A DNA stretch of 64,000 nucleotides, from positions 171,762 to 235,761 of IMG/VR virus record IMGVR_UViG_3300046171_000231; one strand, written 5' to 3'. Shown in pieces: positions 8,401-23,268 of this stretch (position 1 is its first letter; every line of letters starts with the position of its first letter). Below the pieces are notes generated by a model. It worked only from the letters and a program-made list of their open reading frames with translations. It was not told the DNA's origin and did no database searches. Both the position numbers and the translations under genes were made by a program.

Positions 8401-9795
8401 TTACATAAGGTTGGAAACCTTAACTCTTCTGTAGTAACGGTTTGTGTTACGTGTAAGTGTTCCAAGTCCTTGAGTTGTTCCTTGTGAGAATGGGTTCTCA
8501 ACCATACCATATCTGGTCTTGAATCCAATTTTTGGTTGGAATGTATCCTGACCAACCGCACGAACCATCTGTAATGGTACATATGGGCAGTAGAATAATC
8601 CAGCGTCATAAGGAGATGAACCTTTGTATCCGATAACATAGTACTGAGTAGCAGCAACGTTAGCAGCAAATGGGTCAATGTACACTCTGTACTTACCTTG
8701 TAATACACCAGCAAATGTATTGCCTGTGTCATCTACATTAAGGTTAGCGTTAAGAGCAGGAGTGTAGTCTAATACACCAGCCATTGTCAATGCAGAAGCA
8801 ACGTCAGCAGAACAAAGGATCATGTTACCCTTTCCTCTACGAGTCTCTTGTGCGATTGCGTTAGCATCTCTTTCCATCTGGAATATGAGACCTTTGAACT
8901 TCTCAACTGACCATCTTCCGTTGGAGTCTGTGTCTAAGTCGAATGTTCCACCAGAAGCAACGTTTGCTTGAGCACCAGGCTTCGCTACGTTGTAAATTGT
9001 TCTGATAACTTCTCTGTTGATTTCAGCAAGTATCTCTGTTGAAAGGATATTTGCTAACTCAGCCTCTGCGTTCAATCCGTGGATTGCCTTAAGGTCTTGA
9101 GCAAGTTCTAAACTGTACTCTGCCTTTAGTGCTCTGGACTTCGCTGTAACGGTCACTTTCTCGATTGAGAATGCCATTTCGTTGAAGTTATCACCAGTTG
9201 TACCTAGATCTTCAGAATCTCCAGTTGTCATACCCTGACCTACGTTGTAGTCAGTAGCATTTGCTTGAGATGCAGTTCCACCAAGTAATCCTGGATTTGT
9301 ACCACTTTGAGCAGTTGTACCTAAACCAACGTTAGATGCACCAGTAGCAGTGAAACCTGCTGTGTTGTCAAATCCTTCATTCTGACCAGAGAATGCTGAA
9401 TCTGCTTCGTTGAATAGTGCTTCTGAACCAGACTGAGTTTTGAATCTGGATCTCATTGCAAAGATTAGTCCAGTTGGACCATTCATTGGTTGTACACCAG
9501 CCAAATCGTATGCCACCAAGTTAGGCATTGAACGACGAATTAGACTGATAAGTACTGGGTCGAAACCAGCAACAGGACCTGCAGCAGTTGCACCAGCGGT
9601 GAATCCACCTGTGCCAGCAGCGTTTGTTGGTTGTTCTGCAAGGAATGATGCTTCCTCACGTAATTCTTTTTCTTGGTTTTCTAACAGGATAGCGGTTGTA
9701 GCTCTTCTATGAGCGTCTTTGATTGGATCAACTCCATCATAGTCGAGAATAGGTCCCCACTTTTCCTGCAAATGTTCTGTGTTATACATTTGCAT
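8401..9795 (-). CDS. gp23: Major capsid protein gp23
   Basis: EKW.PIL...ILLENQE...GFDPVLISLIRRSMPNLVAYDLAGVQPM...YCPYVPLQM...KIGFKTRYG. Confidence 0.99.
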   Translation of the reverse strand: MQMYNTEHLQEKWGPILDYDGVDPIKDAHRRATTAILLENQEKELREEASFLAEQPTNAAGTGGFTAGATAAGPVAGFDPVLISLIRRSMPNLVAYDLAGVQPMNGPTGLIFAMRSRFKTQSGSEALFNEADSAFSGQNEGFDNTAGFTATGASNVGLGTTAQSGTNPGLLGGTASQANATDYNVGQGMTTGDSEDLGTTGDNFNEMAFSIEKVTVTAKSRALKAEYSLELAQDLKAIHGLNAEAELANILSTEILAEINREVIRTIYNVAKPGAQANVASGGTFDLDTDSNGRWSVEKFKGLIFQMERDANAIAQETRRGKGNMILCSADVASALTMAGVLDYTPALNANLNVDDTGNTFAGVLQGKYRVYIDPFAANVAATQYYVIGYKGSSPYDAGLFYCPYVPLQMVRAVGQDTFQPKIGFKTRYGMVENPFSQGTTQGLGTLTRNTNRYYRRVKVSNLM

Positions 9796-9841: not shown

Positions 9842-10921
9842 TCACTTTTTGGCAGCTCTGGATAGAACGTTCAAATAGGCTTGCATTCTAGGAGTAGTCT
9901 CTTCCGAGATTACTTCATCTGTTGAAACCTCTTCTGATAAGTTCTCAGAGGTGCTCTTTGGAGCACTAGTTTTTGATGGGAAATAAGATTCCTTCAATGT
10001 AACTAGTTTCTCACGATAGTCTGTCTCACTTTCAAACTCAACATTTTCGGCAAGAGTAGCGAGTTTTTCCTTCTGAGTGTCTGCAAGACCTTCAGCTACA
10101 GCAGTGAAAACACCGTCTGCATTGGATTCTGCCAATCTACGATTTAGAGCAACGTTACGATCTATTTGCTCATTGAGTTTTGATTCCATTTCATCAAGTT
10201 TGTCTACCATGCTATTGAGTACATCGTATTTTTCTTCAGGGATTGTTACATAATGTTCTTCAAAAAGTGACTTCATACCTTCCAAGAAGGATTCTGTCAT
10301 CTCTGTTTTAAGTCCTGCTTCTACTTGGAGTGCATTTTCTTGCATCCACTCGTCAGCGACATACTCAAGGTATCCATCAACTCTTTCAGTTAATCCTGCC
10401 TTGATTGTGTCTAACTCTTCAACGAGAGCAGTAGCATAAGACTCTTGTAATTCTTCTTTGATTTCTGCAACTTTAGTTTTGATTGCAGCTTCAAAAATTG
10501 TCTTTGCTTTGTTTTGGAACTCTTCGGAAAGTTCTTCACCTTCAAGAAGTGCTGCAACGTCTGCTTCGACATCATAACTTTCTTCTTCTTCGATGACTTC
10601 TTCCTCAGAAGTTTCTTCTTCAGCGACTACTTCATCTGTAGTTGCTTCTTCTTCAGCGACTACTTCATCTGTAGTTGCTTCTTCTTCCTCGATAACTTCC
10701 TCCTCTGTTTCTGCCTCTTCTGCTTTCATAGCTTTGGCATTAACAACATCTTTCACTTGTGCAAGTGTAAGTGCAGGATCTTTCAGCTTTGCTGAATCGT
10801 CATCAGGTTTATAGTTTTCTGGTGTAGGTCCACCTAGATCTTCTACTGGAATGCCTGATGAAGGCATTGGATCTGCAGGTTTTGCACCTTTGGTGACTAC
10901 GTTTTCTTCGATGTTTTCCAT
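9842..10921 (-). CDS. gp22: Prohead core scaffold protein gp22
   Basis: Acidic coiled coil, LSEEFQNKAKTIFEAA, YLEYVADEW; position between gp21 and gp23. Confidence 0.95.
   Translation of the reverse strand: MENIEENVVTKGAKPADPMPSSGIPVEDLGGPTPENYKPDDDSAKLKDPALTLAQVKDVVNAKAMKAEEAETEEEVIEEEEATTDEVVAEEEATTDEVVAEEETSEEEVIEEEESYDVEADVAALLEGEELSEEFQNKAKTIFEAAIKTKVAEIKEELQESYATALVEELDTIKAGLTERVDGYLEYVADEWMQENALQVEAGLKTEMTESFLEGMKSLFEEHYVTIPEEKYDVLNSMVDKLDEMESKLNEQIDRNVALNRRLAESNADGVFTAVAEGLADTQKEKLATLAENVEFESETDYREKLVTLKESYFPSKTSAPKSTSENLSEEVSTDEVISEETTPRMQAYLNVLSRAAKK
10613..10687. repeat. In-frame 33-bp tandem duplication in gp22 (EEEATTDEVVA x2)
   Basis: ttcttcttcagcgactacttcatctgtagttgc occurs twice in tandem. 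Confidence 0.9.
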
Positions 10922-10992: not shown

Positions 10993-11643
10993 TTAGAGAT
11001 TATTTAGAAAATCTTGAAACAGACTAAGTTTCTTTTCTTCTAATCTATTTTGTGTGACAAGTGTGTTAATACGCTTCTCAGTTTTTGCTGCGAGTTCTTC
11101 ACGAAGACTTCCACCTTCCCAAACCCACTCTCTTCCTTCCATTATTCCATTCACAAAAGCGTCTGGTGCGGAAGGGTCTGCTACTATATCAGCAGCGGTT
11201 GCTAATTGAAAATCTTCTCCAACCATTTTACAACCATTACTACTTTCTCTTAGTGATCCGATACCACGAGAAGACACTCCAAGTTTTACTCCTTCATCTA
11301 AAAGAGAAGATGCAATTTTACCCATTGGAGTAGATAGTAAAGTCGCTTTTCCTCTAAAATTATTTCCCTCTCTTACGAGCGAGGTAATTTTGTGGGATAC
11401 ACGATCTAAGTTAACTGTTGGACCTTCAGGATGACCAAGTTCACCAAGTGCTCTGCCTTGAGAGACAAAAGTTTTGTTGTATCTTCTGACTTCATTTTCA
11501 AGAATATCAACAGGATACATTCTACCATTACGATTTTTGATACCACCTTGAAGAAACACACCCTCGATACAGAGACGTTTTGATTTCCCTTTACCTTCGG
11601 TGATAAATTTTACTTGTGAGACTTCTTCTGTGATAAGTTTCAT
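10993..11643 (-). CDS. gp21: Prohead protease gp21
   Basis: IEGVFLQ...NRNGRMYP...GELGHP...GVSSRG...DIVADPSAPDAFV. Confidence 0.97.
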   Translation of the reverse strand: MKLITEEVSQVKFITEGKGKSKRLCIEGVFLQGGIKNRNGRMYPVDILENEVRRYNKTFVSQGRALGELGHPEGPTVNLDRVSHKITSLVREGNNFRGKATLLSTPMGKIASSLLDEGVKLGVSSRGIGSLRESSNGCKMVGEDFQLATAADIVADPSAPDAFVNGIMEGREWVWEGGSLREELAAKTEKRINTLVTQNRLEEKKLSLFQDFLNNL

Positions 11644-16448: not shown

Positions 16449-16670
16449 CTACCAATCTGGATATTCCCACCTCTTTATTTCTACTTTTTTTTTACTTTTT
16501 ACTCTTGCAATCGTGCAAGTTTTACATTCATAAGAATATGATGATTGAATACTTTTATTCTTTCTTATTAAATAAAACCCATCTATTAAATCTTTAATAT
16601 TTCCACAAACACGACACTTACGTTCTGTCAGAACAAAATGGTCAACTTCAAGTTGTTCATCAAAATCCAT
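16449..16670 (-). CDS. Small Zn-binding conserved protein (CxxC...CxxC)
   Basis: RKCRVC...YECKTC. Confidence 0.7.
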   Translation of the reverse strand: MDFDEQLEVDHFVLTERKCRVCGNIKDLIDGFYLIRKNKSIQSSYSYECKTCTIARVKSKKKVEIKRWEYPDW

Positions 16671-16906
16671 TATAGAACTTGGATTACACCATTACAATCT
16701 GGAATATCTTGCATTATTTTACTTTCAATACCTTGTTTAAGTGTCATCGCACTCATTGCACAACTTGTGCAAGCACCACCTAATCTAACTTTAACATAGT
16801 TTGTACCTTCTTCTATCTCTACAAACTCTACAAATCCTCCATCTGCTTCAATATAAGGAGCAATTTCAGATAAAGACTTGGTTACATTACTTTCATTTAA
16901 ATCCAT
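16670..16906 (-). CDS. NifU-C / NfuA-like Fe-S cluster scaffold or carrier domain
   Basis: IAPYIEADGGFVEFV...VKVRLGGACTSCAMSAMTLKQGIE with CxxC; start MDLNE coupled to the gp17 stop (TAATG). Confidence 0.9.
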   Translation of the reverse strand: MDLNESNVTKSLSEIAPYIEADGGFVEFVEIEEGTNYVKVRLGGACTSCAMSAMTLKQGIESKIMQDIPDCNGVIQVL

Positions 16907-18550
16907 TACATATAATCCCACATATAAGATTTGTCACCATATTCATCAGTATGCCATAAATCTCCGTCCTTGTCAATAAAAGTAGATTCATCTTGTCCGT
17001 CAGACATAAAACCAAATGGTGCCATATCTTGTTCGATTTGATTTTTCTGTTCCTCATATATTCTCTTTCTTACATCATTATCAGTCATTTCTTTGAAATA
17101 ATCCTGTGCAACTAGCCAAGCAAATATCACTAAACACATTGCTAGGTCATCATTACATCCCTCTTCTGCTTCAAATGAGTTGTGTTTTTGAGAGAAAGTA
17201 GTTAATTCTGATATTATATCATAATCAATAATAAGTATCTTATCATCTTCTAGTAAAGTTTTTAAGTTTGAACAACCCAATTTTTTAACTGCTTGTGTAG
17301 TTCTCACTCCTAACTGTGACCTTTTACCACTAAATCCAGCACCAACAACTTGACCTGCACGACCTCTTTGAGAACACATCAATAAATTATCATACTCTAA
17401 ATCATAATTTAAGATAGATGCGACCTGATCTCCAATATCATTTACTTCACATAATATGAATGCTTTATTATATGCTTTTCCTATATCATCAATAATACTC
17501 GGAAACAGCATTGGTTTGATTTCATTATTACGATACTTTGCAACTGCTTTATATGGAAAGTTAGTTATATCAAAAACAACAAATGCAGAATAATCATTTC
17601 CAAGACCACGAGCAACGTCAACTGTAATCAAATAATTATGGTCTTTTTGTGGTCCTTCATATACATCTAATCCTGCATTTCTTTGAATTGGACTTTCATA
17701 TACAAGATTCTTTAATTTTGATGGATTGATTAAAGTATTAACAGATCCTAGAAACTCACATTCAAACTCAACCTTAAATTGTTGCTCTGATGTGTTTGCG
17801 ATTGTTTGTTCTTTCCATTCTTCATCACGACCTGGTACTTCAGACCAATGAACTTCAGTTGGTACATATTCATTTTTACCTCTATCAGCATCGTGCCACA
17901 TACGATAAAAATGATTCATACCTCTTGGGGTAGAAACAATTATAACTTTTGATTTTTGACCAGATGAAATTGTTGGATATACAGACGCAAAGAAATCATC
18001 CTGCAATATGATTCGGTATGAATGCAAATTCGTCTAAGAATATGACGTTATAAGATCCACCCCTAACTGCAGATGATGATGTTGAGTTTGCTGATATTTT
18101 TGACCCGTTCTCTAATTCTAATGAACCTTTATTCCAAGATATAATACCTTGCTGCATCCATCTTGGTAAATTTTCGTATGCTAATTGAAGTCTACCTAAT
18201 AAATCTCTGGCAGTAGAGGCTTTGTTTGCCAGTATAGCAATATTAATGTTATCATTAAAAACTGCATAATGTAAGAGATAAGATACAACTGTAGTGGATT
18301 TACCCGTCTGCCGAGGCATCTTACAGATGTTAAAACGGTTTTCATGGAAATTACTTATTAGTTTTTTCTGGAAAGGATACATCCGAAATGGAACTAATCC
18401 TTCATCAATGGATACAATCTTTATATGTTTGTTTGCAAAATATACAGGATCTTCTTTACACCTCATAAACTCAAGAATATTCTCTTGAGAAAACTCAATA
18501 GGAGTATTTGCTTTTTTTAAATTGGGATTACCAAGATAAACTTCACTCAT
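16906..18550 (-). CDS. gp17: Terminase large subunit gp17, split by a one-base insertion near 18001
   Basis: PRQTGKSTT, IFLDEFAF...VSTPRG. Removing one G from GCAGGATGAT restores ...HIADDFFASVYPTISSG. Confidence 0.97.
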
Positions 18551-18879: not shown

Positions 18880-19164
18880 TTATGCTTTTTTTATCTTCGC
18901 ACTTAATCTTTTAAGTTTTATGTAATCACCAGGTTTATCAGGGTTTAACTGAGGATTAGATTTTAAGACATCACTGTTAATTTTACCCCTTTTAGCAAGA
19001 GGAATAGGAAGATTGAATCCAGTGCTCTTTCTAAACTTATCTGAACTCTTCTTTATCATATCCAAAGTTCTGATCCTATTTGTAATCGCATCATCTACAG
19101 TCACAGGTATAGTATCATAATTTTTTGGAGATACTTGCTCCATAAAAGTTTTAAAATCTTTCAT
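18880..19164 (-). CDS. Putative internal head protein with a capsid-targeting-like N-terminus (MKDFKTFME)
   Basis: Start coupled to the upstream stop (TGATG); N-terminus resembles the T4 IP CTS MKTYQEFIAE. Confidence 0.55.
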   Translation of the reverse strand: MKDFKTFMEQVSPKNYDTIPVTVDDAITNRIRTLDMIKKSSDKFRKSTGFNLPIPLAKRGKINSDVLKSNPQLNPDKPGDYIKLKRLSAKIKKA

Positions 19165-20963
19165 CAGCAGTTCCACCTTCTTAATGCCTTATTAATTCTT
19201 GAATCTGGATCTCTTCTTGTCTTTGCAGAAGTAAGTTTCTTCTTCATACCTTTCATTCTTCTACAGAATGATAATCTTCTCTTTGCAGATTTAGAACCTT
19301 TTTTCAATTTCTTAGGATCTTTTGTAACTGCAGTTTTTAATTTAGAACCAGGATTTTCACGACGATATGCATTAACTGCCTTTTGACTTAAACCATCAGT
19401 CTTATCTTTACGATTCACCTTCTGCCAATCTTCATCTAATTCATCTCTCCAGTTTGACATACTTTCTTTAAGTGGTTTTGCTTTGATTATATCAACAGTT
19501 TCAATTTCTGTAAACTTAATATCATCAACATTCCAATCTTGAATAGTCAATGCTTCATCTGCAATATCTTCTTTTTGCATTCCAAATTTAAAACCTTTAT
19601 TTGTCTTTGGTTTAAATTTTTGAGTTGCTAAGTTAACTTCATCTGCACCAATATCAAGTCTAAATTGTTGTGAACCTGGTATCTGTCTCTGCACATTTTT
19701 TTCTATTTGACCACTTTTTAAATAATTATCAGCAGTTTTAAAATCATTTTTCTGTGCTGATGTAAATTTTGCAGGATTGTTACTCATAGTATTTCGAGCA
19801 ATATTCATACCATACTCTGCCTTTTTTTGTACAACTGCACCAACATTTGGAACTACTCCATCAGCATCCATTTTAATACCCATACCTGATTTAGATAATG
19901 CTGATTTCAATGCGTCTTTATTTGTTCCACTACCGACCTCTAATTGATTCATTTTACCTACCACATTTGCCTGAGCTGTTTTTCTTGCATCTAAACTTTG
20001 TTGAGTCAGTGGTTCTTTTGCAAACTGCTTCTTTTTCATTTCTTCAGGTGATGGAGCAGTTTTTGCTCCTGTAGCACCTAAACCTTCATTCATTGCCTTT
20101 TCTAAATTATCTGCCTGTTTTGCGTGTGTTTTAGAACCACTTCTCAATTTCTTAACTAAGTGTTTTACAAATGGTTTATCTTTTTTATCTAATTCTTCCT
20201 TCATTGCATCTTTACGAATTTTAGCATAAAAAATTTTTTCACCTTCCTTCTCACCATATTGGTCTTTAAAACTCTTCATCATATCATCGGATTTTTCATA
20301 TTTTTTCTTCAACATTGTATCCTTTCTCTTTTGAGCAGGAGTCATAGTTTCCTCTTTAAATTCAGTACCAGGAACCACTCTAATAAGTTTTCCTGTTCCA
20401 GTAACTTTACCTTTACTATCTCTAGTTACAGTATATTGATTTGTTGGTTTGTAATTAACTTTTTTAGGACCGCCAGGTATTTTTCTATCTGCAACGTACT
20501 TATCTACTTGTTTAGTAATTGCAGCGTCTTTCATATTTTTTCTTATTTGACTAAATGTTTTACCGATTGCACGAGCACCTGCAACTGCTCCAACCAATCC
20601 AGCAGCAACTAATGCTCCTTTTGGAGTTTTAGATATTGCTTTCCCAGCTCTAGCAGCTAATTTTGCAAGACCTCTCCTTGGAGGAGTTCCTTTTACTACA
20701 TCTTTATATGCTCTAAAAGATGCTGAATTTTTTGATTTTTTTGCTTGGTTTACTATATTTTGTGATAACTTATCTTCTCTTGAAGTATCGACACCCGCAT
20801 ACATTCTGCTTAAAAATCCTTTTGCTCTTGATCCAAGTGATGCTAAAGTATCTCCAGGTTTTATAGTTACCTGATTAATTGATTTAACATTCTTGTTTAT
20901 TTTTGGAAGTTCTGGTTCCTTCTTCTCACCCATATAAGCAGTACCATCTCCACCAGTCGGCAT
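19164..20963 (-). CDS. Lys-rich modular putative head protein (C-terminal part; reading frame is open back to ~21095)
   Basis: Ends in the conserved cyanophage module DWQKVNRKDKTDGLSQKAVNAYRRENPGSKL...SFCRRMKGM...SRINKALRRWNC. Confidence 0.7.
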   Translation of the reverse strand: MPTGGDGTAYMGEKKEPELPKINKNVKSINQVTIKPGDTLASLGSRAKGFLSRMYAGVDTSREDKLSQNIVNQAKKSKNSASFRAYKDVVKGTPPRRGLAKLAARAGKAISKTPKGALVAAGLVGAVAGARAIGKTFSQIRKNMKDAAITKQVDKYVADRKIPGGPKKVNYKPTNQYTVTRDSKGKVTGTGKLIRVVPGTEFKEETMTPAQKRKDTMLKKKYEKSDDMMKSFKDQYGEKEGEKIFYAKIRKDAMKEELDKKDKPFVKHLVKKLRSGSKTHAKQADNLEKAMNEGLGATGAKTAPSPEEMKKKQFAKEPLTQQSLDARKTAQANVVGKMNQLEVGSGTNKDALKSALSKSGMGIKMDADGVVPNVGAVVQKKAEYGMNIARNTMSNNPAKFTSAQKNDFKTADNYLKSGQIEKNVQRQIPGSQQFRLDIGADEVNLATQKFKPKTNKGFKFGMQKEDIADEALTIQDWNVDDIKFTEIETVDIIKAKPLKESMSNWRDELDEDWQKVNRKDKTDGLSQKAVNAYRRENPGSKLKTAVTKDPKKLKKGSKSAKRRLSFCRRMKGMKKKLTSAKTRRDPDSRINKALRRWNC

Positions 20964-21076
20964 TTGCTGTCTTACTCTAGCAGGTACAGTCTTTTCATTA
21001 TCCTGATATACAACAGCAGGACCGTAATTAGTGTTCTTTAGTTTTGTTTTTTCTTGTATATCAGAAGAAGTGTCTT

Positions 21077-22825
21077 TTACTTCTTCTTCTTGGACTTTTT
21101 TACGCAGTTTGGATACCTCTTACCAAACATTGTTTTCATTCCTTTCTTTTCGTAACCTGCCCAACACTTCTCATCTAAAGTTGATCTCCAATCATAATGT
21201 TCTTTCTTCATTTCTTTTGTTATCAATTCCTTTTCACCAGCAACTACTGTCTTCACATTCTTTTGTCTTTTCATCTCTGCCTTTTTTTGAAAAATAGTTT
21301 GACCTTTATTTAAATCTTTACCAGATCTACCCATATTTTCATTTACTTCGTATTCAACTGACTCTGATTTATTACCCCAGTTTGCAGCACCTACCTTACG
21401 ACACTTAACTAATGCTCCTGATGCATATGCACTTGGCCAAACTGAATATCTTGACTTAACTTTGTGATAACAAGCATCTTTTGTGCCACTACCTTTACCT
21501 TTCTTGTCTTTTACCTCTGTAATTATTTCTTCTTCCTCTATATCTTCTAATAGTATATCTCCTACAACTACACCGTTCTCTGCAAACCAACCACGATTAA
21601 CTTCAATCGCATATCTTATCTCACCATCAGGATATACAGGAATTGGGTTCATTGGATCTAATTCTTTAATACTTTCAATTATACCTTCTTCGTTTATGAA
21701 CGCAATATCAAGAGGTATAAAAGTATTCTTCATATGAAATGAATATTGATCAGTATTTTCAAATACGAAGAGCATACCTCTATCTTGTTCCAAACTCTCA
21801 CGGAACATCAGACCTAATTTAAACTCTCCATCATTTTGTGGAACTTCAAGTTGAAGTGGTAGTGAAACAAATTCTTCTTTCATTTTCTTTTTAGGTTTGT
21901 CGGTTGCAACGTATGTTGGTTTTGCTGCGTTTGTTTTTGATTGTTGACCTTTATCTTTACTTTTCTTTCTTCTAGATGCAGATCTTCTCTCTGCAGGTGT
22001 CATACTCTCATATTTAGAACGAGATACACATTTAGGTACACCTTCACCTGGTTCATCACTTGCACAAGTTCCACCTGTGGTTACATTCACCCATCCACCT
22101 TTACCGTCTTTGGATTTAGAACCTTTGAACCAAGAACGTAATGAACCCTCACTCATACTCTTTGGTTTCTTACCTTTTTCCTTCATATTAATCGCAATCG
22201 CTGCTTGTTGAGCAGAACTTGATGCTTCTTTTACATCTTTACTATCAAGATAATCTGCAGCAGTATCCAAATAATCAGATGCTTTAGTTATCTTTGATTG
22301 AACCCACGCTTTGAAATTGTCTTTCTTACGAGAGTGTTTTTCAATACGTTTAGATGCTCTATCTGCAGTTTTCAACTGACTACGAATCATCTCTGGTTCG
22401 TGATCACCATGCTTCTCTTCATTCATTTTCTTAGTCTTTTTCTTCATTGAGTTAATAAACTTTCGATAAACTGCAGCTTCAGAAGTTTTACCCATCACTC
22501 TTGCTCTTTGCTCCATAGCAATTGCTGCTTGAATTTTATGAGCATGTGATCTACTAGATTTCCTAATTTTCGCCACACTTGCTTTAGCAGTAGCAACGTC
22601 CTTGAAACCCAGTCCATGAATAGTTCCTTTAGGATCTTCATCAGTATATAAATCAGAGTGTTTTTTAGATTTAGCAGGTTGTCCCTTTTTACGGGCAATA
22701 CGAGGATTCGATCCCTCTGAAACTAAAAAACCATCCTCACGAACTTTGTATCCGTCAGGAATGGGTTTACACTTTTTATCAGTGTTACAATAGTATTGTC
22801 CCTTTTTACAGGAAGTCTTTCCCAT
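21077..22825 (-). CDS. Modular putative head protein containing a DUF192-like domain
   Basis: GLMFRESL...GMLFVF...FHMKNTFIPLDIAFI...YAIEVNRGW (DUF192) among small basic modules; CTAAATA promoter at 22851. Confidence 0.72.
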   Translation of the reverse strand: MGKTSCKKGQYYCNTDKKCKPIPDGYKVREDGFLVSEGSNPRIARKKGQPAKSKKHSDLYTDEDPKGTIHGLGFKDVATAKASVAKIRKSSRSHAHKIQAAIAMEQRARVMGKTSEAAVYRKFINSMKKKTKKMNEEKHGDHEPEMIRSQLKTADRASKRIEKHSRKKDNFKAWVQSKITKASDYLDTAADYLDSKDVKEASSSAQQAAIAINMKEKGKKPKSMSEGSLRSWFKGSKSKDGKGGWVNVTTGGTCASDEPGEGVPKCVSRSKYESMTPAERRSASRRKKSKDKGQQSKTNAAKPTYVATDKPKKKMKEEFVSLPLQLEVPQNDGEFKLGLMFRESLEQDRGMLFVFENTDQYSFHMKNTFIPLDIAFINEEGIIESIKELDPMNPIPVYPDGEIRYAIEVNRGWFAENGVVVGDILLEDIEEEEIITEVKDKKGKGSGTKDACYHKVKSRYSVWPSAYASGALVKCRKVGAANWGNKSESVEYEVNENMGRSGKDLNKGQTIFQKKAEMKRQKNVKTVVAGEKELITKEMKKEHYDWRSTLDEKCWAGYEKKGMKTMFGKRYPNCVKKSKKKK

Positions 22826-22833
22826 TATACAGA

Positions 22834-23268
22834 CTATTCAGAGCTATTATTATTTAGCATTCCGTCTTTTAACATCTTCGATAGTTCAGTTGTTGAACCT
22901 ACAAACAATGCATTGTTAGTAACTGTATTTTGAGTTTTTGGATTATCTGCTTCAATATCTTTTACCTTTTTATGCAAATCTGCGAGTTTATCTGTAGTAT
23001 CTGCCACACTTTTAATTAACTGACCTGCAACTTCATATGCTCTTGGACTTGCAGTTTCTCCTGCAACTTCCATAATACCATTAATTGCTTCTTGTCCTTT
23101 TTCGATTAATGAATATAAATTTCCTCTTGTATAATCATAATCCTTTTCAACATTTTCTGCTCTAGTTTGACTCTTCTGTATTTCAGTATCTTCTGCTTTA
23201 ACAATCGCATCTACTTCAACACTATCATCAGTATTGAAAGTATCATTTAAAGAATCAAACTTACTCAT
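22834..23268 (-). CDS. gp16: Terminase small subunit gp16
   Basis: SPRAYEVAGQLIK...NNALFVGSTTEL. Confidence 0.92.
   Translation of the reverse strand: MSKFDSLNDTFNTDDSVEVDAIVKAEDTEIQKSQTRAENVEKDYDYTRGNLYSLIEKGQEAINGIMEVAGETASPRAYEVAGQLIKSVADTTDKLADLHKKVKDIEADNPKTQNTVTNNALFVGSTTELSKMLKDGMLNNNSSE

What the first reader, a model, noticed from the sequence alone, without database searches (positions are those of the whole stretch)
19164..22825. Beads-on-a-string head cargo: a mosaic polyprotein punctuated by prohead-protease-like sites
Seen: the two large ORFs between gp16 and gp17 consist of short basic, often Cys-containing modules and a DUF192-like domain. The junctions repeatedly read hydrophobic-x-E: LVSE, MNEE, VKE, MSE, MKEE, ITE, VNE, LDE, FKEE, MKEE, MNE, LKE, LDE. 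Established: T4 gp21 cleaves after (I/L/V)-x-E in proteins packed into the prohead. Inference: a polyprotein cut during head maturation into about a dozen small DNA-binding or ejected effector proteins, with modules swappable between phages.
Basis: partly seen in the sequence, partly recalled or inferred. Interest (0 to 1): 0.6.

Follow-up and report, generated by a model that had tools for sequence, protein, structure and literature searches.

The report
Frameshift-joined bead-string virion cargo protein
Two very basic genes between the terminase genes of a T4-like cyanophage appear to be one frameshift-joined string of small swappable modules, each preceded by a site resembling the head-protease cleavage motif, so the phage probably packs a kit of mini-proteins into its head, but cleavage is not yet shown.

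Summary
Two minus-strand ORFs lie between gp16 and gp17: 21077-22825 (582 aa) and 19164-20963 (599 aa). Both are Lys-rich mosaics of small modules, and all 13 quoted hydrophobic-x-E strings are present. Raw motif counts are unimpressive, and the strict T4 L/I-x-E motif is not enriched. Position is what stands out. In more than 340 relatives, module insertions and homology breaks fall at conserved hydrophobic-x-Glu sites.

Three further lines support a head-cargo reading.
- Homologues (T4-GC119) were found in virions by published mass spectrometry.
- T4-type capsid-targeting leaders (MKTFKQFISE-like) head neighbouring small ORFs, including window ORF 18880-19164. They also head stand-alone copies of the same modules, and the virion-packaged cytidylyltransferase.
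- The phage encodes gp21, and gp23 carries an LAE site.

It would give a 1220-aa fusion besides the 582-aa product.

Cleavage, head location and frameshifting remain inferences, and neither ORF has a canonical leader of its own. I rate this a new variant of a known kind, of moderately high interest.

The parts
21077..22825 (-). ORF P0001 (582 aa), the 0-frame product. It has nine beads: Cys3 beta-module 1-37; helical module 38-136; helical module 137-200; AQQAA mini-module 201-226; GGWVN/Cys2 module 227-317; DUF192 318-437; DUF5872-like Cys2 module 438-496; variable Lys-rich stretch 497-552; CWxGY beta-hairpin 553-582.
22715..22825 (-). N-terminal Cys3 module (res 1-37), ending FLVSE. It is the usual N-terminus of this family. 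In some relatives a CTS-like leader precedes it (MKSLNLFINE|G...).
21515..21874 (-). DUF192 bead (res 318-437) with an acidic tail. It is entered after MKE(E) and left at LLE/ITE.
21095..21101 (-). Slippery heptamer A_AAA_AAG, in phase with P0001 (codons GTA AAA AAG).
21063..21087 (-). Predicted frameshift-stimulating hairpin. It has a 9-bp stem (21087..21079 pairing with 21071..21063) and a 7-nt loop, and lies 7 nt after the heptamer. The 0-frame stop TAA (21079..21077) lies at the top of the stem.
20964..21095 (-). Start-less 44-codon stretch in the -1 frame (VQEEEVKDTSSDIQEKTKLKNTNYGP...RVRQQ). It joins P0001 residue 577 to P0002. It is conserved as protein in relatives and carries an IQE site.
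19164..20963 (-). ORF P0002 (599 aa), the distal part of the long form. Parts: leader MPTGGDGTAYMGE 1-13; low-confidence Lys-rich region with a Gly/Ala-rich hydrophobic helix (about 112-135) 14-204; helical beads 205-256 and 257-293; linker 294-317; helical domain 318-465; bead 466-500; DUF6321 501-599.
18880..19164 (-). ORF94, a small basic protein with a T4-type capsid-targeting-like leader (MKDFKTFME|Q). Its ATG overlaps the P0002 stop (TAATG).
10993..11643 (-). gp21 prohead protease, the presumed processing enzyme. It is 37% identical to T4 gp21. Its N-terminal LITE aligns with T4's LIE-9.
8401..9795 (-). gp23 major capsid protein. SFLAE54|Q matches T4's SFLTE65|A maturation site by eye; the automatic alignment is ambiguous there.
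   Evidence: PMC9026906

Best explanation
The two ORFs are one translational unit of a T4-like cyanomyovirus, in the T4-GC119 family.

Translation. Most ribosomes stop at the P0001 stop codon and make a 582-aa protein. A fraction slip -1 on A_AAA_AAG, helped by a hairpin 7 nt downstream. These read through 44 start-less codons into P0002 and make a 1220-aa fusion.

Architecture. Both products are strongly basic strings of about 9 and about 18 small, independently exchangeable modules.

Fate. The protein is built into the prohead, as T4 internal proteins are. The prohead protease gp21 then cuts it after the conserved hydrophobic-x-Glu that precedes nearly every module. This releases a set of small basic proteins that stay with the DNA and are probably ejected with it. 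The frameshift would carry the distal modules, which have no start codon or leader of their own, in on the proximal part at a fixed ratio. This is a Gag-Pol-like logic.

Shown here: the architecture, the mosaicism, the position and conservation of the sites, the frameshift cassette and its conservation, and the CTS-like leaders nearby and in relatives.

Shown elsewhere: virion presence of homologues.

Inferred: frameshifting in vivo, head location, cleavage, and ejection or function.
For: 1. Virion presence. T4-GC119 was detected in S-SM1 virions with 13 peptides, and its gene length varies from 276 to 2985 nt among cyanophages (PMC3037559 Table S8). S-SCSM1 ORF29 is a 'virion protein' by MS.

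2. Mosaicism. There are more than 8000 metagenome relatives with variable length and domain content, mixed PHROG matches, and 152 insert clusters.

3. Sites at borders. For 10 or more unrelated modules, Phi-x-E sits at a fixed offset before the module in many different upstream contexts. Examples are 29 of 31 contexts for SLxxWF, 40 of 49 for CWxGY, 35 of 40 for KGKGSG and 23 of 24 for HHKKD.

4. AF2 models place the sites at domain edges or in low-confidence linkers.

5. T4-type leaders.
- T4 IPII/IPIII read MKTYQEFIAE and IPI reads MKTFKEFTS...ITE.
- The cyanophage g16-g17 regions hold 29 such leaders, all on the coding strand and none on the other strand. One is window ORF94.
- Stand-alone leader-led proteins share modules with the polyproteins.
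- The same module start is preceded by a leader in some proteins and by FLVKE/FLVSE in others.
- The leader also heads the cytidylyltransferase that published MS finds in virions (PMC3037559; PMC9602691).
- The leaders' P3 residues are L, I, F and M. That partly overlaps the junctions' V, M, L, I and F; V, common at junctions, is not seen in the leaders.

6. Machinery. gp21, gp22 and a gp23 LAE site are present.

7. Frameshift.
- The heptamer is in phase, with a 7-nt spacer and a 9-bp hairpin (dG -10 kcal/mol, z -2.7).
- The heptamer and the 3' arm are invariant in 18 other loci while the loop varies (the 5' arm was fixed by how the loci were picked); 100% of cells pair.
- The arms use AAG x4 and TCT x2, although AAA is the preferred Lys codon.
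- The -1 frame overlaps by 40-91 nt and has no start codon for 35-68 codons in 18 of the 19 cases; L057 has one near the frame opening.
- Seven relatives run on in frame 0.
- One-frame fusions of the two parts exist: P0156, S-SM2_109 and S-SCSM1_29.
Against: - There is no direct evidence of cleavage or of frameshifting.
- P0001 (MGKTSC...) and P0002 have no canonical CTS, so how they would enter the prohead is open.
- The strict T4 motif L/I-x-E is not enriched. Many sites have V or M at P3, which is not documented for T4 gp21.
- Some borders have the hydrophobic residue at P4 or lack the motif.
- Only about a third of all indel borders follow a Glu.
- Linkers are Glu-rich in general, so part of the signal may be compositional.
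- The hairpin shows no compensatory changes, because its arms are invariant. The loci were partly selected by a pattern that included the 5' arm.
- The Syn9 homologue was not detected in virions.
- The g16-g17 region also holds tail-fibre genes in relatives, so position does not argue for the head.
Confidence: 0.52

Rival explanations
1. The protein is an uncleaved multi-domain virion protein. The beads stay joined, for example as a DNA-condensing or inner-capsid protein. The conserved hydrophobic-x-Glu is a linker or helix-capping feature, or a binding motif, and not a protease site.
For: No cleavage data exist. Linkers are Glu-rich overall. Several sites sit at helix ends in the AF2 models. 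The strict T4 motif is not enriched. The published MS only shows presence in virions.
Against: The same tripeptide recurs before 10 or more unrelated modules in many contexts, with Glu never replaced by Asp. It occupies the position of the cleavable end of T4-type leaders in stand-alone copies of the same modules.
Confidence: 0.25
2. The protein is a fusion relic. The beads were once separate small genes, and the junction M-x-E strings (MNEE, MKEE, MSE) are fossil start codons or internal starts. No processing is involved.
For: Met is over-represented at P3. Some relatives start exactly at a module border, such as S-SM2_109 with MSNPR.... In P-SSM4 the modules are spread over four ORFs.
Against: At the same aligned position Met alternates with V, L, I and F: VKEG, MSEG, MKEG and VSEG occur before one module, and L/I/V before another. 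The Glu is the invariant residue, which a start-codon relic does not explain. Stand-alone copies carry a 9-10-residue leader rather than a bare Met.
Confidence: 0.08
3. The two ORFs are separate genes and the apparent frameshift cassette is coincidental. P0002 starts at its own ATG (20963, or at Met11), and the Lys-codon run with the TCT-TCT repeat is only sequence conservation among close relatives.
For: P0002 has an in-frame ATG, and gene callers use it or Met11. There are no compensatory changes in the hairpin. The heptamer is also kept in 7 loci that need no shift.
Against: The 44-52 codons upstream of the ATG are open and conserved as protein (VQEEEVKDTSS.., KTKLKNTNYGP..). They lack ATG, GTG or TTG in 18 of the 19 cases. 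The heptamer phase, spacer and stem match the dnaX type. The arms are invariant while the loop and the downstream sequence diverge at once. The L014 homologue has no Met at the P0002 start position.
Confidence: 0.15

Closest known systems
T4 internal proteins IPI/IPII/IPIII and Alt: capsid-targeting sequence plus gp21 cleavage (PMC9026906)
   Same: Both are small basic proteins in a hypervariable locus. The N-terminal leaders are of the MKT(F/Y)xxFxxE type. Cleavage follows hydrophobic-x-Glu. gp21, gp22 and gp23 are present. The proteins are virion-borne.
   Different: Here many modules are strung in one 582- or 1220-aa polypeptide with internal sites, rather than one leader per protein. The window's two ORFs lack the leader. 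P3 is often V or M. The locus lies between g16 and g17.
Proteolysed inner-body and ejection proteins of giant phages phiKZ, 201phi2-1 and SPN3US (PMC9026906, PMC5694885, PMC10052503)
   Same: A gp21-related prohead protease cuts many head-internal proteins after Glu at a short motif (S/A-X-E or A-X-E), sometimes at several sites.
   Different: The proteins are unrelated and larger. They show no bead-like modular shuffling and no frameshift. The P3 preference differs.
Polyvalent proteins of phages and conjugative elements (Iyer et al. 2017, PMC5512222)
   Same: Many unrelated domains sit in one polypeptide, the genes lie next to virion genes, delivery with the DNA is predicted, and the analogy to viral polyproteins is drawn.
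   Different: Those carry recognisable enzymatic effector domains and usually an embedded peptidase. Here the modules are tiny, basic and of unknown function. No peptidase domain was found. Release would be in trans, by the prohead protease.
dnaX-type -1 programmed frameshift, and Gag-Pol logic
   Same: The A_AAA_AAG heptamer and a downstream stem-loop would give a short and a long product that share an N-terminus. The long form would carry extra cargo into a capsid and then be cut by the capsid protease.
   Different: In dnaX the shift truncates the protein. Here it would extend it by 643 residues. This is not a retroelement, and the frameshift efficiency is unknown.

Membership tests
T4-type internal head proteins (CTS / gp21 substrates) | N-terminal capsid-targeting sequence of about 10 residues ending in hydrophobic-x-Glu | tested here: not met
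   P0001 starts MGKTSCKKGQYYC and P0002 starts MPTGGDGTAYMGE. The feature is met by the adjacent ORF94 (MKDFKTFME), by three CTS+Cys-module relatives, and by stand-alone module copies.
T4-type internal head proteins (CTS / gp21 substrates) | Cleaved by gp21 after L/I-x-E | not testable with these tools
   Conserved Phi-x-E sites lie at module borders. P3 is often V, M or F rather than L or I.
T4-type internal head proteins (CTS / gp21 substrates) | Present inside the mature head and ejected | not testable with these tools
   Only virion presence of homologues is known, from published MS.
T4-type internal head proteins (CTS / gp21 substrates) | Basic protein, with gp21 protease and gp22 scaffold encoded by the same phage | tested here: met
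   Net charge is +41 and +62 and pI is 9.6 and 10.05. gp21 matches PF03420 and gp22 matches phrog_237.
Polyvalent proteins (Iyer 2017) | Several unrelated domains in one polypeptide, encoded next to virion genes | tested here: met
Polyvalent proteins (Iyer 2017) | Recognisable effector enzyme domains and/or an embedded processing peptidase | tested here: not met
   Pfam finds only DUF192, DUF6321 and a weak DUF5872 match. Foldseek against the PDB finds only DUF192 folds.
-1 programmed ribosomal frameshift cassette | X_XXY_YYZ heptamer in phase with the upstream frame | tested here: met
   A_AAA_AAG at 21101..21095, in phase in the window and in 18 other loci.
-1 programmed ribosomal frameshift cassette | Stable structure 5-9 nt downstream, conserved | tested here: met
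   A 9-bp hairpin lies after a 7-nt spacer, dG -10 kcal/mol, z -2.7. All cells pair in 18 distinct sequences, but there is no covariation.
-1 programmed ribosomal frameshift cassette | Overlapping -1 ORF that lacks its own start and is conserved as protein | tested here: met
-1 programmed ribosomal frameshift cassette | Trans-frame product made in vivo | not testable with these tools
   No proteomic or reporter data are available.
DUF192 (PF02643) | HMM score above the gathering cut-off, and matching fold | tested here: met
   96.3 bits against a cut-off of 27. Foldseek matches 3m7a and 3pjy at E about 5e-5.
DUF6321 (PF19846) | HMM score above the gathering cut-off | tested here: met
   50.9 bits against a cut-off of 28.5, residues 519-597 of P0002.

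The most novel reading that the evidence does not exclude
T4-like cyanophages, among the most abundant viruses in the sea, load their heads with a combinatorial library of mini-proteins. The proteins are made as a polyprotein whose length is set by a -1 frameshift. It is taken into the prohead through its proximal part and cut into beads by the prohead protease. This is a Gag-Pol-like strategy in a tailed phage. The g16-g17 hyperplastic region would then be the cyanophage counterpart of the T-even internal-protein loci, and a large untapped source of ejected anti-defence or host-takeover modules.
Probability: 0.35. Interest if true: 0.8.

Novelty: new variant of a known kind. Interest (0 to 1): 0.68.

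Why it matters
If the reading is right, four things follow.
- It would explain what a hypervariable, very abundant marine gene family does. The family has more than 8000 metagenome variants and has been annotated only as 'hypothetical' or 'structural'.
- It would extend the T4 capsid-targeting and gp21 processing system to cyanophages.
- It would give a rationale for why a metabolic enzyme (the cytidylyltransferase/NMNAT) turns up in cyanophage virions.
- It would add a recoding event in a phage structural region that works as a cargo-loading device.

It would also point to dozens of small module families as candidates for ejected early-acting proteins. All of this can be tested with ordinary virion proteomics on cultured cyanophages.

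Tried and rejected
- Raw motif counting gives only weak enrichment and none for the strict T4 motif. I did not use it as the argument.
- Function of individual beads stayed open. Pfam at relaxed thresholds gave only chance-level hits plus a weak DUF5872 match. Foldseek against the PDB found only DUF192 folds for P0001 and nothing for P0002.
- The ESM Atlas gave only viral 'hypothetical' clusters. One lead came out of it: the bead at residues 38-137 recurs fused to cytidylyltransferase-like, PAP2 and FMN-reductase domains.
- Literature searches for DUF192 in phages, for DUF6321/DUF3008, for 'capsid targeting sequence' with 'cyanophage', and for frameshifting in cyanophages found nothing relevant in the held library.
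- The S-SCSM1 supplement holds no peptide-level data for ORF29.
- A first hairpin count used a mis-registered structure string and was redone.
- A first regex for the cassette was wrong and was redone.
- One search was a mistaken reference and returned an error.
The result stands, but a reference should have been used.
- I did not use the large profile search, the complex prediction or the reads tools. None could show cleavage or frameshifting.


Full report
CONTEXT. The window is the last 64 kb of a 235,761-bp IMG/VR virus record. It is a T4-like cyanomyovirus, and its closest named relative by gp23 is Prochlorococcus phage P-SSM2 at 85% identity. All genes in the region lie on the minus strand:
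- gp23, 8401-9795
- gp22 scaffold, 9842-10921
- gp21 prohead protease, 10993-11643 (PF03420)
- gp20, gp19 and gp18
- gp17, as two overlapping ORFs, 16906-18550
- two small ORFs
- the two target ORFs
- gp16, 22834-23268
- gp15

OBSERVATION. P0001 (21077-22825, 582 aa) and P0002 (19164-20963, 599 aa) are as described. Both are Lys-rich (16%) and strongly basic, with net charge +41 and +62, and they rank among the five most basic of 187 large ORFs in the genome. P0001 holds a genuine DUF192 domain and P0002 ends in DUF6321. PHROG matches are piecemeal, with a different family for each stretch. All 13 quoted hydrophobic-x-E strings are present at the stated places. Counting alone is unconvincing. 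The relaxed motif occurs 18 times against 9.5 expected in P0001 (p=0.002) and 7 against 6.3 in P0002, and the strict T4 motif L/I-x-E is not enriched.

WHAT THE FAMILY IS. The proteins belong to T4-GC119 of Sullivan et al. 2010. That cluster is present in 15 of 16 cyanophage genomes with gene lengths from 276 to 2985 nt. It was detected in purified S-SM1 virions (13 peptides) and not detected in Syn9 (PMC3037559, Table S8). The S-SCSM1 homologue (ORF29) is annotated as a virion protein from mass spectrometry. Relatives of P0002 cover from 16 to 100% of it. In S-SM2 and S-SCSM1 the P0001-like and P0002-like parts form a single protein. In P-SSM4 the modules are spread over four ORFs next to the cytidylyltransferase gene.

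ARE THE SITES AT MODULE BORDERS? I pooled 347 relatives, taken from the protein searches and from ORFs of 80 IMG/VR loci.
- Global pairwise alignment of 159 non-redundant proteins gave 7912 clean internal insertions of at least 15 residues, which collapse to 152 insert families.
- A Glu immediately precedes the insert in 49 of the 152 families. Lys, which is twice as abundant, does so in 32.
- All eight best-supported modules (41-133 members each) have a hydrophobic-x-Glu within +-4 residues of the left border, and five of eight at the right border. The base rate is 0.20, so p is about 3e-6 and 3e-7.
- Among the 38 families with at least three members, 22 have one at the left border.
- At internal ends of BLAST homology blocks, Glu is the last aligned residue in 26% of cases against a 6.9% background, while Asp and Lys are not enriched.
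- Anchoring on the conserved core of 15 modules shows the site at a fixed offset upstream in many different contexts. Examples are VKEG, MSEG, MKEG, MNEG and VSEG before SLxxWF (29 of 31 contexts); L(D/S/E/N)EK before CWxGY (40 of 49); L(T/N)EVKDK before KGKGSG (35 of 40); and (I/L/V)xE before HHKKD (23 of 24).
- In P0001 and P0002 the junction Glu residues are 82-99% conserved with essentially no Asp, and P3 is hydrophobic in 63-99% of relatives.
- The AF2 models have a low mean pLDDT (57 and 53) but contain confident modules. They place the sites at module edges or in low-confidence linkers. For example, in P0002 the helices end at 255 and 296, next to MKE256 and MNE293.

Not every border fits. 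Some have the hydrophobic residue at P4, and the hypervariable stretch after residue 485 is messy.

INDEPENDENT SUPPORT: T4-TYPE TARGETING LEADERS. I read the T4 leaders from the T4 record itself. IPII and IPIII begin MKTYQEFIAE|A, and IPI begins MKTFKEFTS...ITE|A. The review PMC9026906 states three relevant points. The first 10 residues of IPIII suffice for head targeting. gp21 cuts after L/I-x-E. Asp at the cleavage position blocks processing.

A pattern built on these leaders finds 29 ORF starts in the 80 cyanophage loci. All lie on the coding strand and none on the opposite strand. Examples are MKTFKQFISE, MKTYKEFITE, MKTFQEFISE and MKSFKDFLKE.

In the window's own 235-kb genome the pattern finds two ORFs.
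- ORF94 (18880-19164, MKDFKTFME|Q) has an ATG that overlaps the P0002 stop.
- A 423-aa cytidylyltransferase-like protein (MKSFLQFITE|S; PF01467) lies outside the window. That enzyme family (T4-GC190, or NMNAT) is the metabolic enzyme repeatedly found in cyanophage virions by MS (PMC3037559; PMC9602691). Its S-SCSM1 and P-SSM4 orthologues begin MKSFLQFLKE and MKKFSAFLKE.

The leader therefore tracks with virion packaging in these phages. Three further observations tie the leaders to the beads.
- Stand-alone leader-led proteins share modules with the bead strings: S-SM2_108, PSSM4_158, S-SCSM1_30 and a 171-aa ORF in L035.
- Three GC119-type proteins carry a leader in front of the Cys3 module, reading MKSLNLFINE|GTSKKCPKGQYYC.
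- The same module start is preceded by a leader in some proteins (MKTLQQFLE|SSNPR, MKSFKQFQE|SWS..) and by FLVSE|G or FLVKE|G in the strings.

The P3 residues of the leaders are L, I, F and M. They overlap the junctions' V, M, L, I and F only in part, since V is absent from the leaders. This partly answers the objection that the junction motif departs from T4's.

The phage's own gp23 has SFLAE54|Q where T4 has SFLTE65|A; the automatic alignment is ambiguous at that point. The gp21 N-terminal LITE aligns with T4's LIE-9.

The P0002 frame is open from 21119, which is 52 codons upstream of its ATG. That stretch has no ATG, GTG or TTG, and it overlaps the end of P0001 by 40 nt. Inside the overlap, in phase with P0001, lies GT[A AAA AAG] at 21101-21095. 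After a 7-nt spacer comes a 9-bp hairpin (AGAAGAAGU/ACUUCUUCU, with a 7-nt loop that holds part of the 0-frame stop). Its free energy is -10 kcal/mol, with z = -2.7.

The arrangement recurs in 18 independent IMG/VR loci.
- The heptamer is in phase.
- The -1 ORF overlaps by 40-91 nt.
- The first possible start codon lies 35-68 codons into the -1 frame, except in L057 where one lies near the frame opening. The -1 ORFs run up to 538 codons.
- The heptamer and the 3' arm are invariant while the loop and everything downstream vary; the pattern that picked the loci already fixed the 5' arm. Every cell pairs, and the closing pair switches between U-A and U-G.
- There is no covariation, so the structural evidence rests on conservation and on codon choice. 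The arms use AAG four times and TCT twice, although AAA outnumbers AAG about 2:1 in these genes.

The start-less stretch is conserved as protein (VQEEEVKDTSS(L/D/E)xQEK...), and it is followed at once by a Phi-x-E and then by different modules in different loci. Seven other loci keep the heptamer but run on in frame 0 without a stop. P0156, S-SM2_109 and S-SCSM1_29 carry both parts in one frame. The stop after ..NCVKKSKKKK is shared by 89 pooled proteins, so the split is not an assembly error.

The long product would be P0001 residues 1-577, plus 44 residues, plus P0002, for 1220 aa in total.

MECHANISM PROPOSED. The unit is a bead-string cargo protein made in a short and a long form. It would be incorporated into the prohead, cut by gp21 after the junction Glu residues, and the basic fragments would be retained with the DNA and probably ejected.

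The steps I have shown are the architecture, the border sites, the leaders in the neighbourhood and in relatives, and the frameshift cassette with its conservation. The steps taken from the literature are virion presence of homologues and the rules of the T4 system. The steps that remain inferred are frameshifting in vivo, head location, cleavage, and function.

The main gap is that neither P0001 nor P0002 has a canonical leader. Two elements keep the N-terminal position in front of varying modules and are candidates for the targeting role. One is the Cys3 module, which starts about 130 pooled proteins. The other is the MPTGGDGTAYMGE element, seen 28 times, half of them N-terminal, in front of at least 7 different sequences. 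This is untested.

RIVALS. There are three: an uncleaved multi-domain virion protein with a conserved linker motif; fusion relics with fossil start codons; and two separate genes with a coincidental cassette. Each is weighed in its own section.

COMPARISON AND NOVELTY. The system works like the T4 internal-protein, CTS and gp21 system, and like the proteolysed inner-body proteins of giant phages. Conceptually it resembles the polyvalent proteins of Iyer et al. 2017. It fails one defining feature of each of these groups. It has no leader of its own, no embedded peptidase and no known effector domains.

The held literature does not link capsid-targeting sequences, internal proteins or frameshifting to cyanophages. 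Subscription papers such as Millard et al. 2009 could not be read. I therefore file the finding as a new variant of a known kind.

No reads tools were used. No step needed referral.

Noticed in passing
window 16906-18027 and 17996-18550 (-): The large terminase gp17 is split into two ORFs that overlap by 32 nt (..FIPNHIAG* / ..DDFFASVYPT..). No slippery heptamer is seen at the junction. This looks like a single-base indel, either an assembly error or a real lesion, rather than recoding.
   Followed up: partly
window 18880-19164 (-): A 94-aa basic ORF has a T4-like capsid-targeting leader (MKDFKTFME|Q), and its ATG overlaps the P0002 stop (TAATG). It has no PHROG or Pfam family. It is a likely internal-protein analogue.
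   Followed up: partly
own genome outside the window, G000:C1:140805-142076 (-) = L088:109-1377: A cytidylyltransferase-like protein (PF01467) begins with a T4-type leader, MKSFLQFITE. Its orthologues in S-SCSM1 (a virion protein by MS) and in P-SSM4 have the leader too. This may explain why the enzyme is found in cyanophage virions.
   Followed up: yes
own genome outside the window, G000:C1:128235-130691 (-): Two more very Lys-rich proteins (316 and 488 aa, net charge +21 and +72) have Gly/Ala-rich hydrophobic segments like the one at P0002 residues 112-135. They show no BLAST similarity to P0001 or P0002.
   Followed up: no
window 20559-20630 (-), P0002 residues about 112-135: A Gly/Ala-rich hydrophobic helix (GALVAAGLVGAVAGARAIG) sits inside an otherwise highly charged protein. 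Similar segments occur as inserted modules in relatives. It might act on membranes during ejection or mediate self-association. This was not tested.
   Followed up: no
window 22418-22714 (-), P0001 residues 38-137: Atlas structure matches (TM 0.8-0.9 normalised to the query) find this helical bead fused to cytidylyltransferase-like, PAP2, NTP-transferase and FMN-reductase domains in other viral proteins. This is only a lead that the bead may be an adaptor accompanying packaged enzymes.
   Followed up: no
window 16449-16921 (-): Two small ORFs lie between gp17 and gp18. One is an endonuclease VII-like protein (phrog_4723). The other is an 83-aa protein with a CxxC motif (phrog_29737). They are typical hyperplastic-region content.
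   Followed up: no
loci L033, L038, L042, L044, L053, L081: These relatives keep GTA AAA AAG but continue in frame 0. There, a -1 slip would terminate after one to three codons (KKV*, KKVQK*). That would be a dnaX-like truncation, if it happens at all.
   Followed up: no
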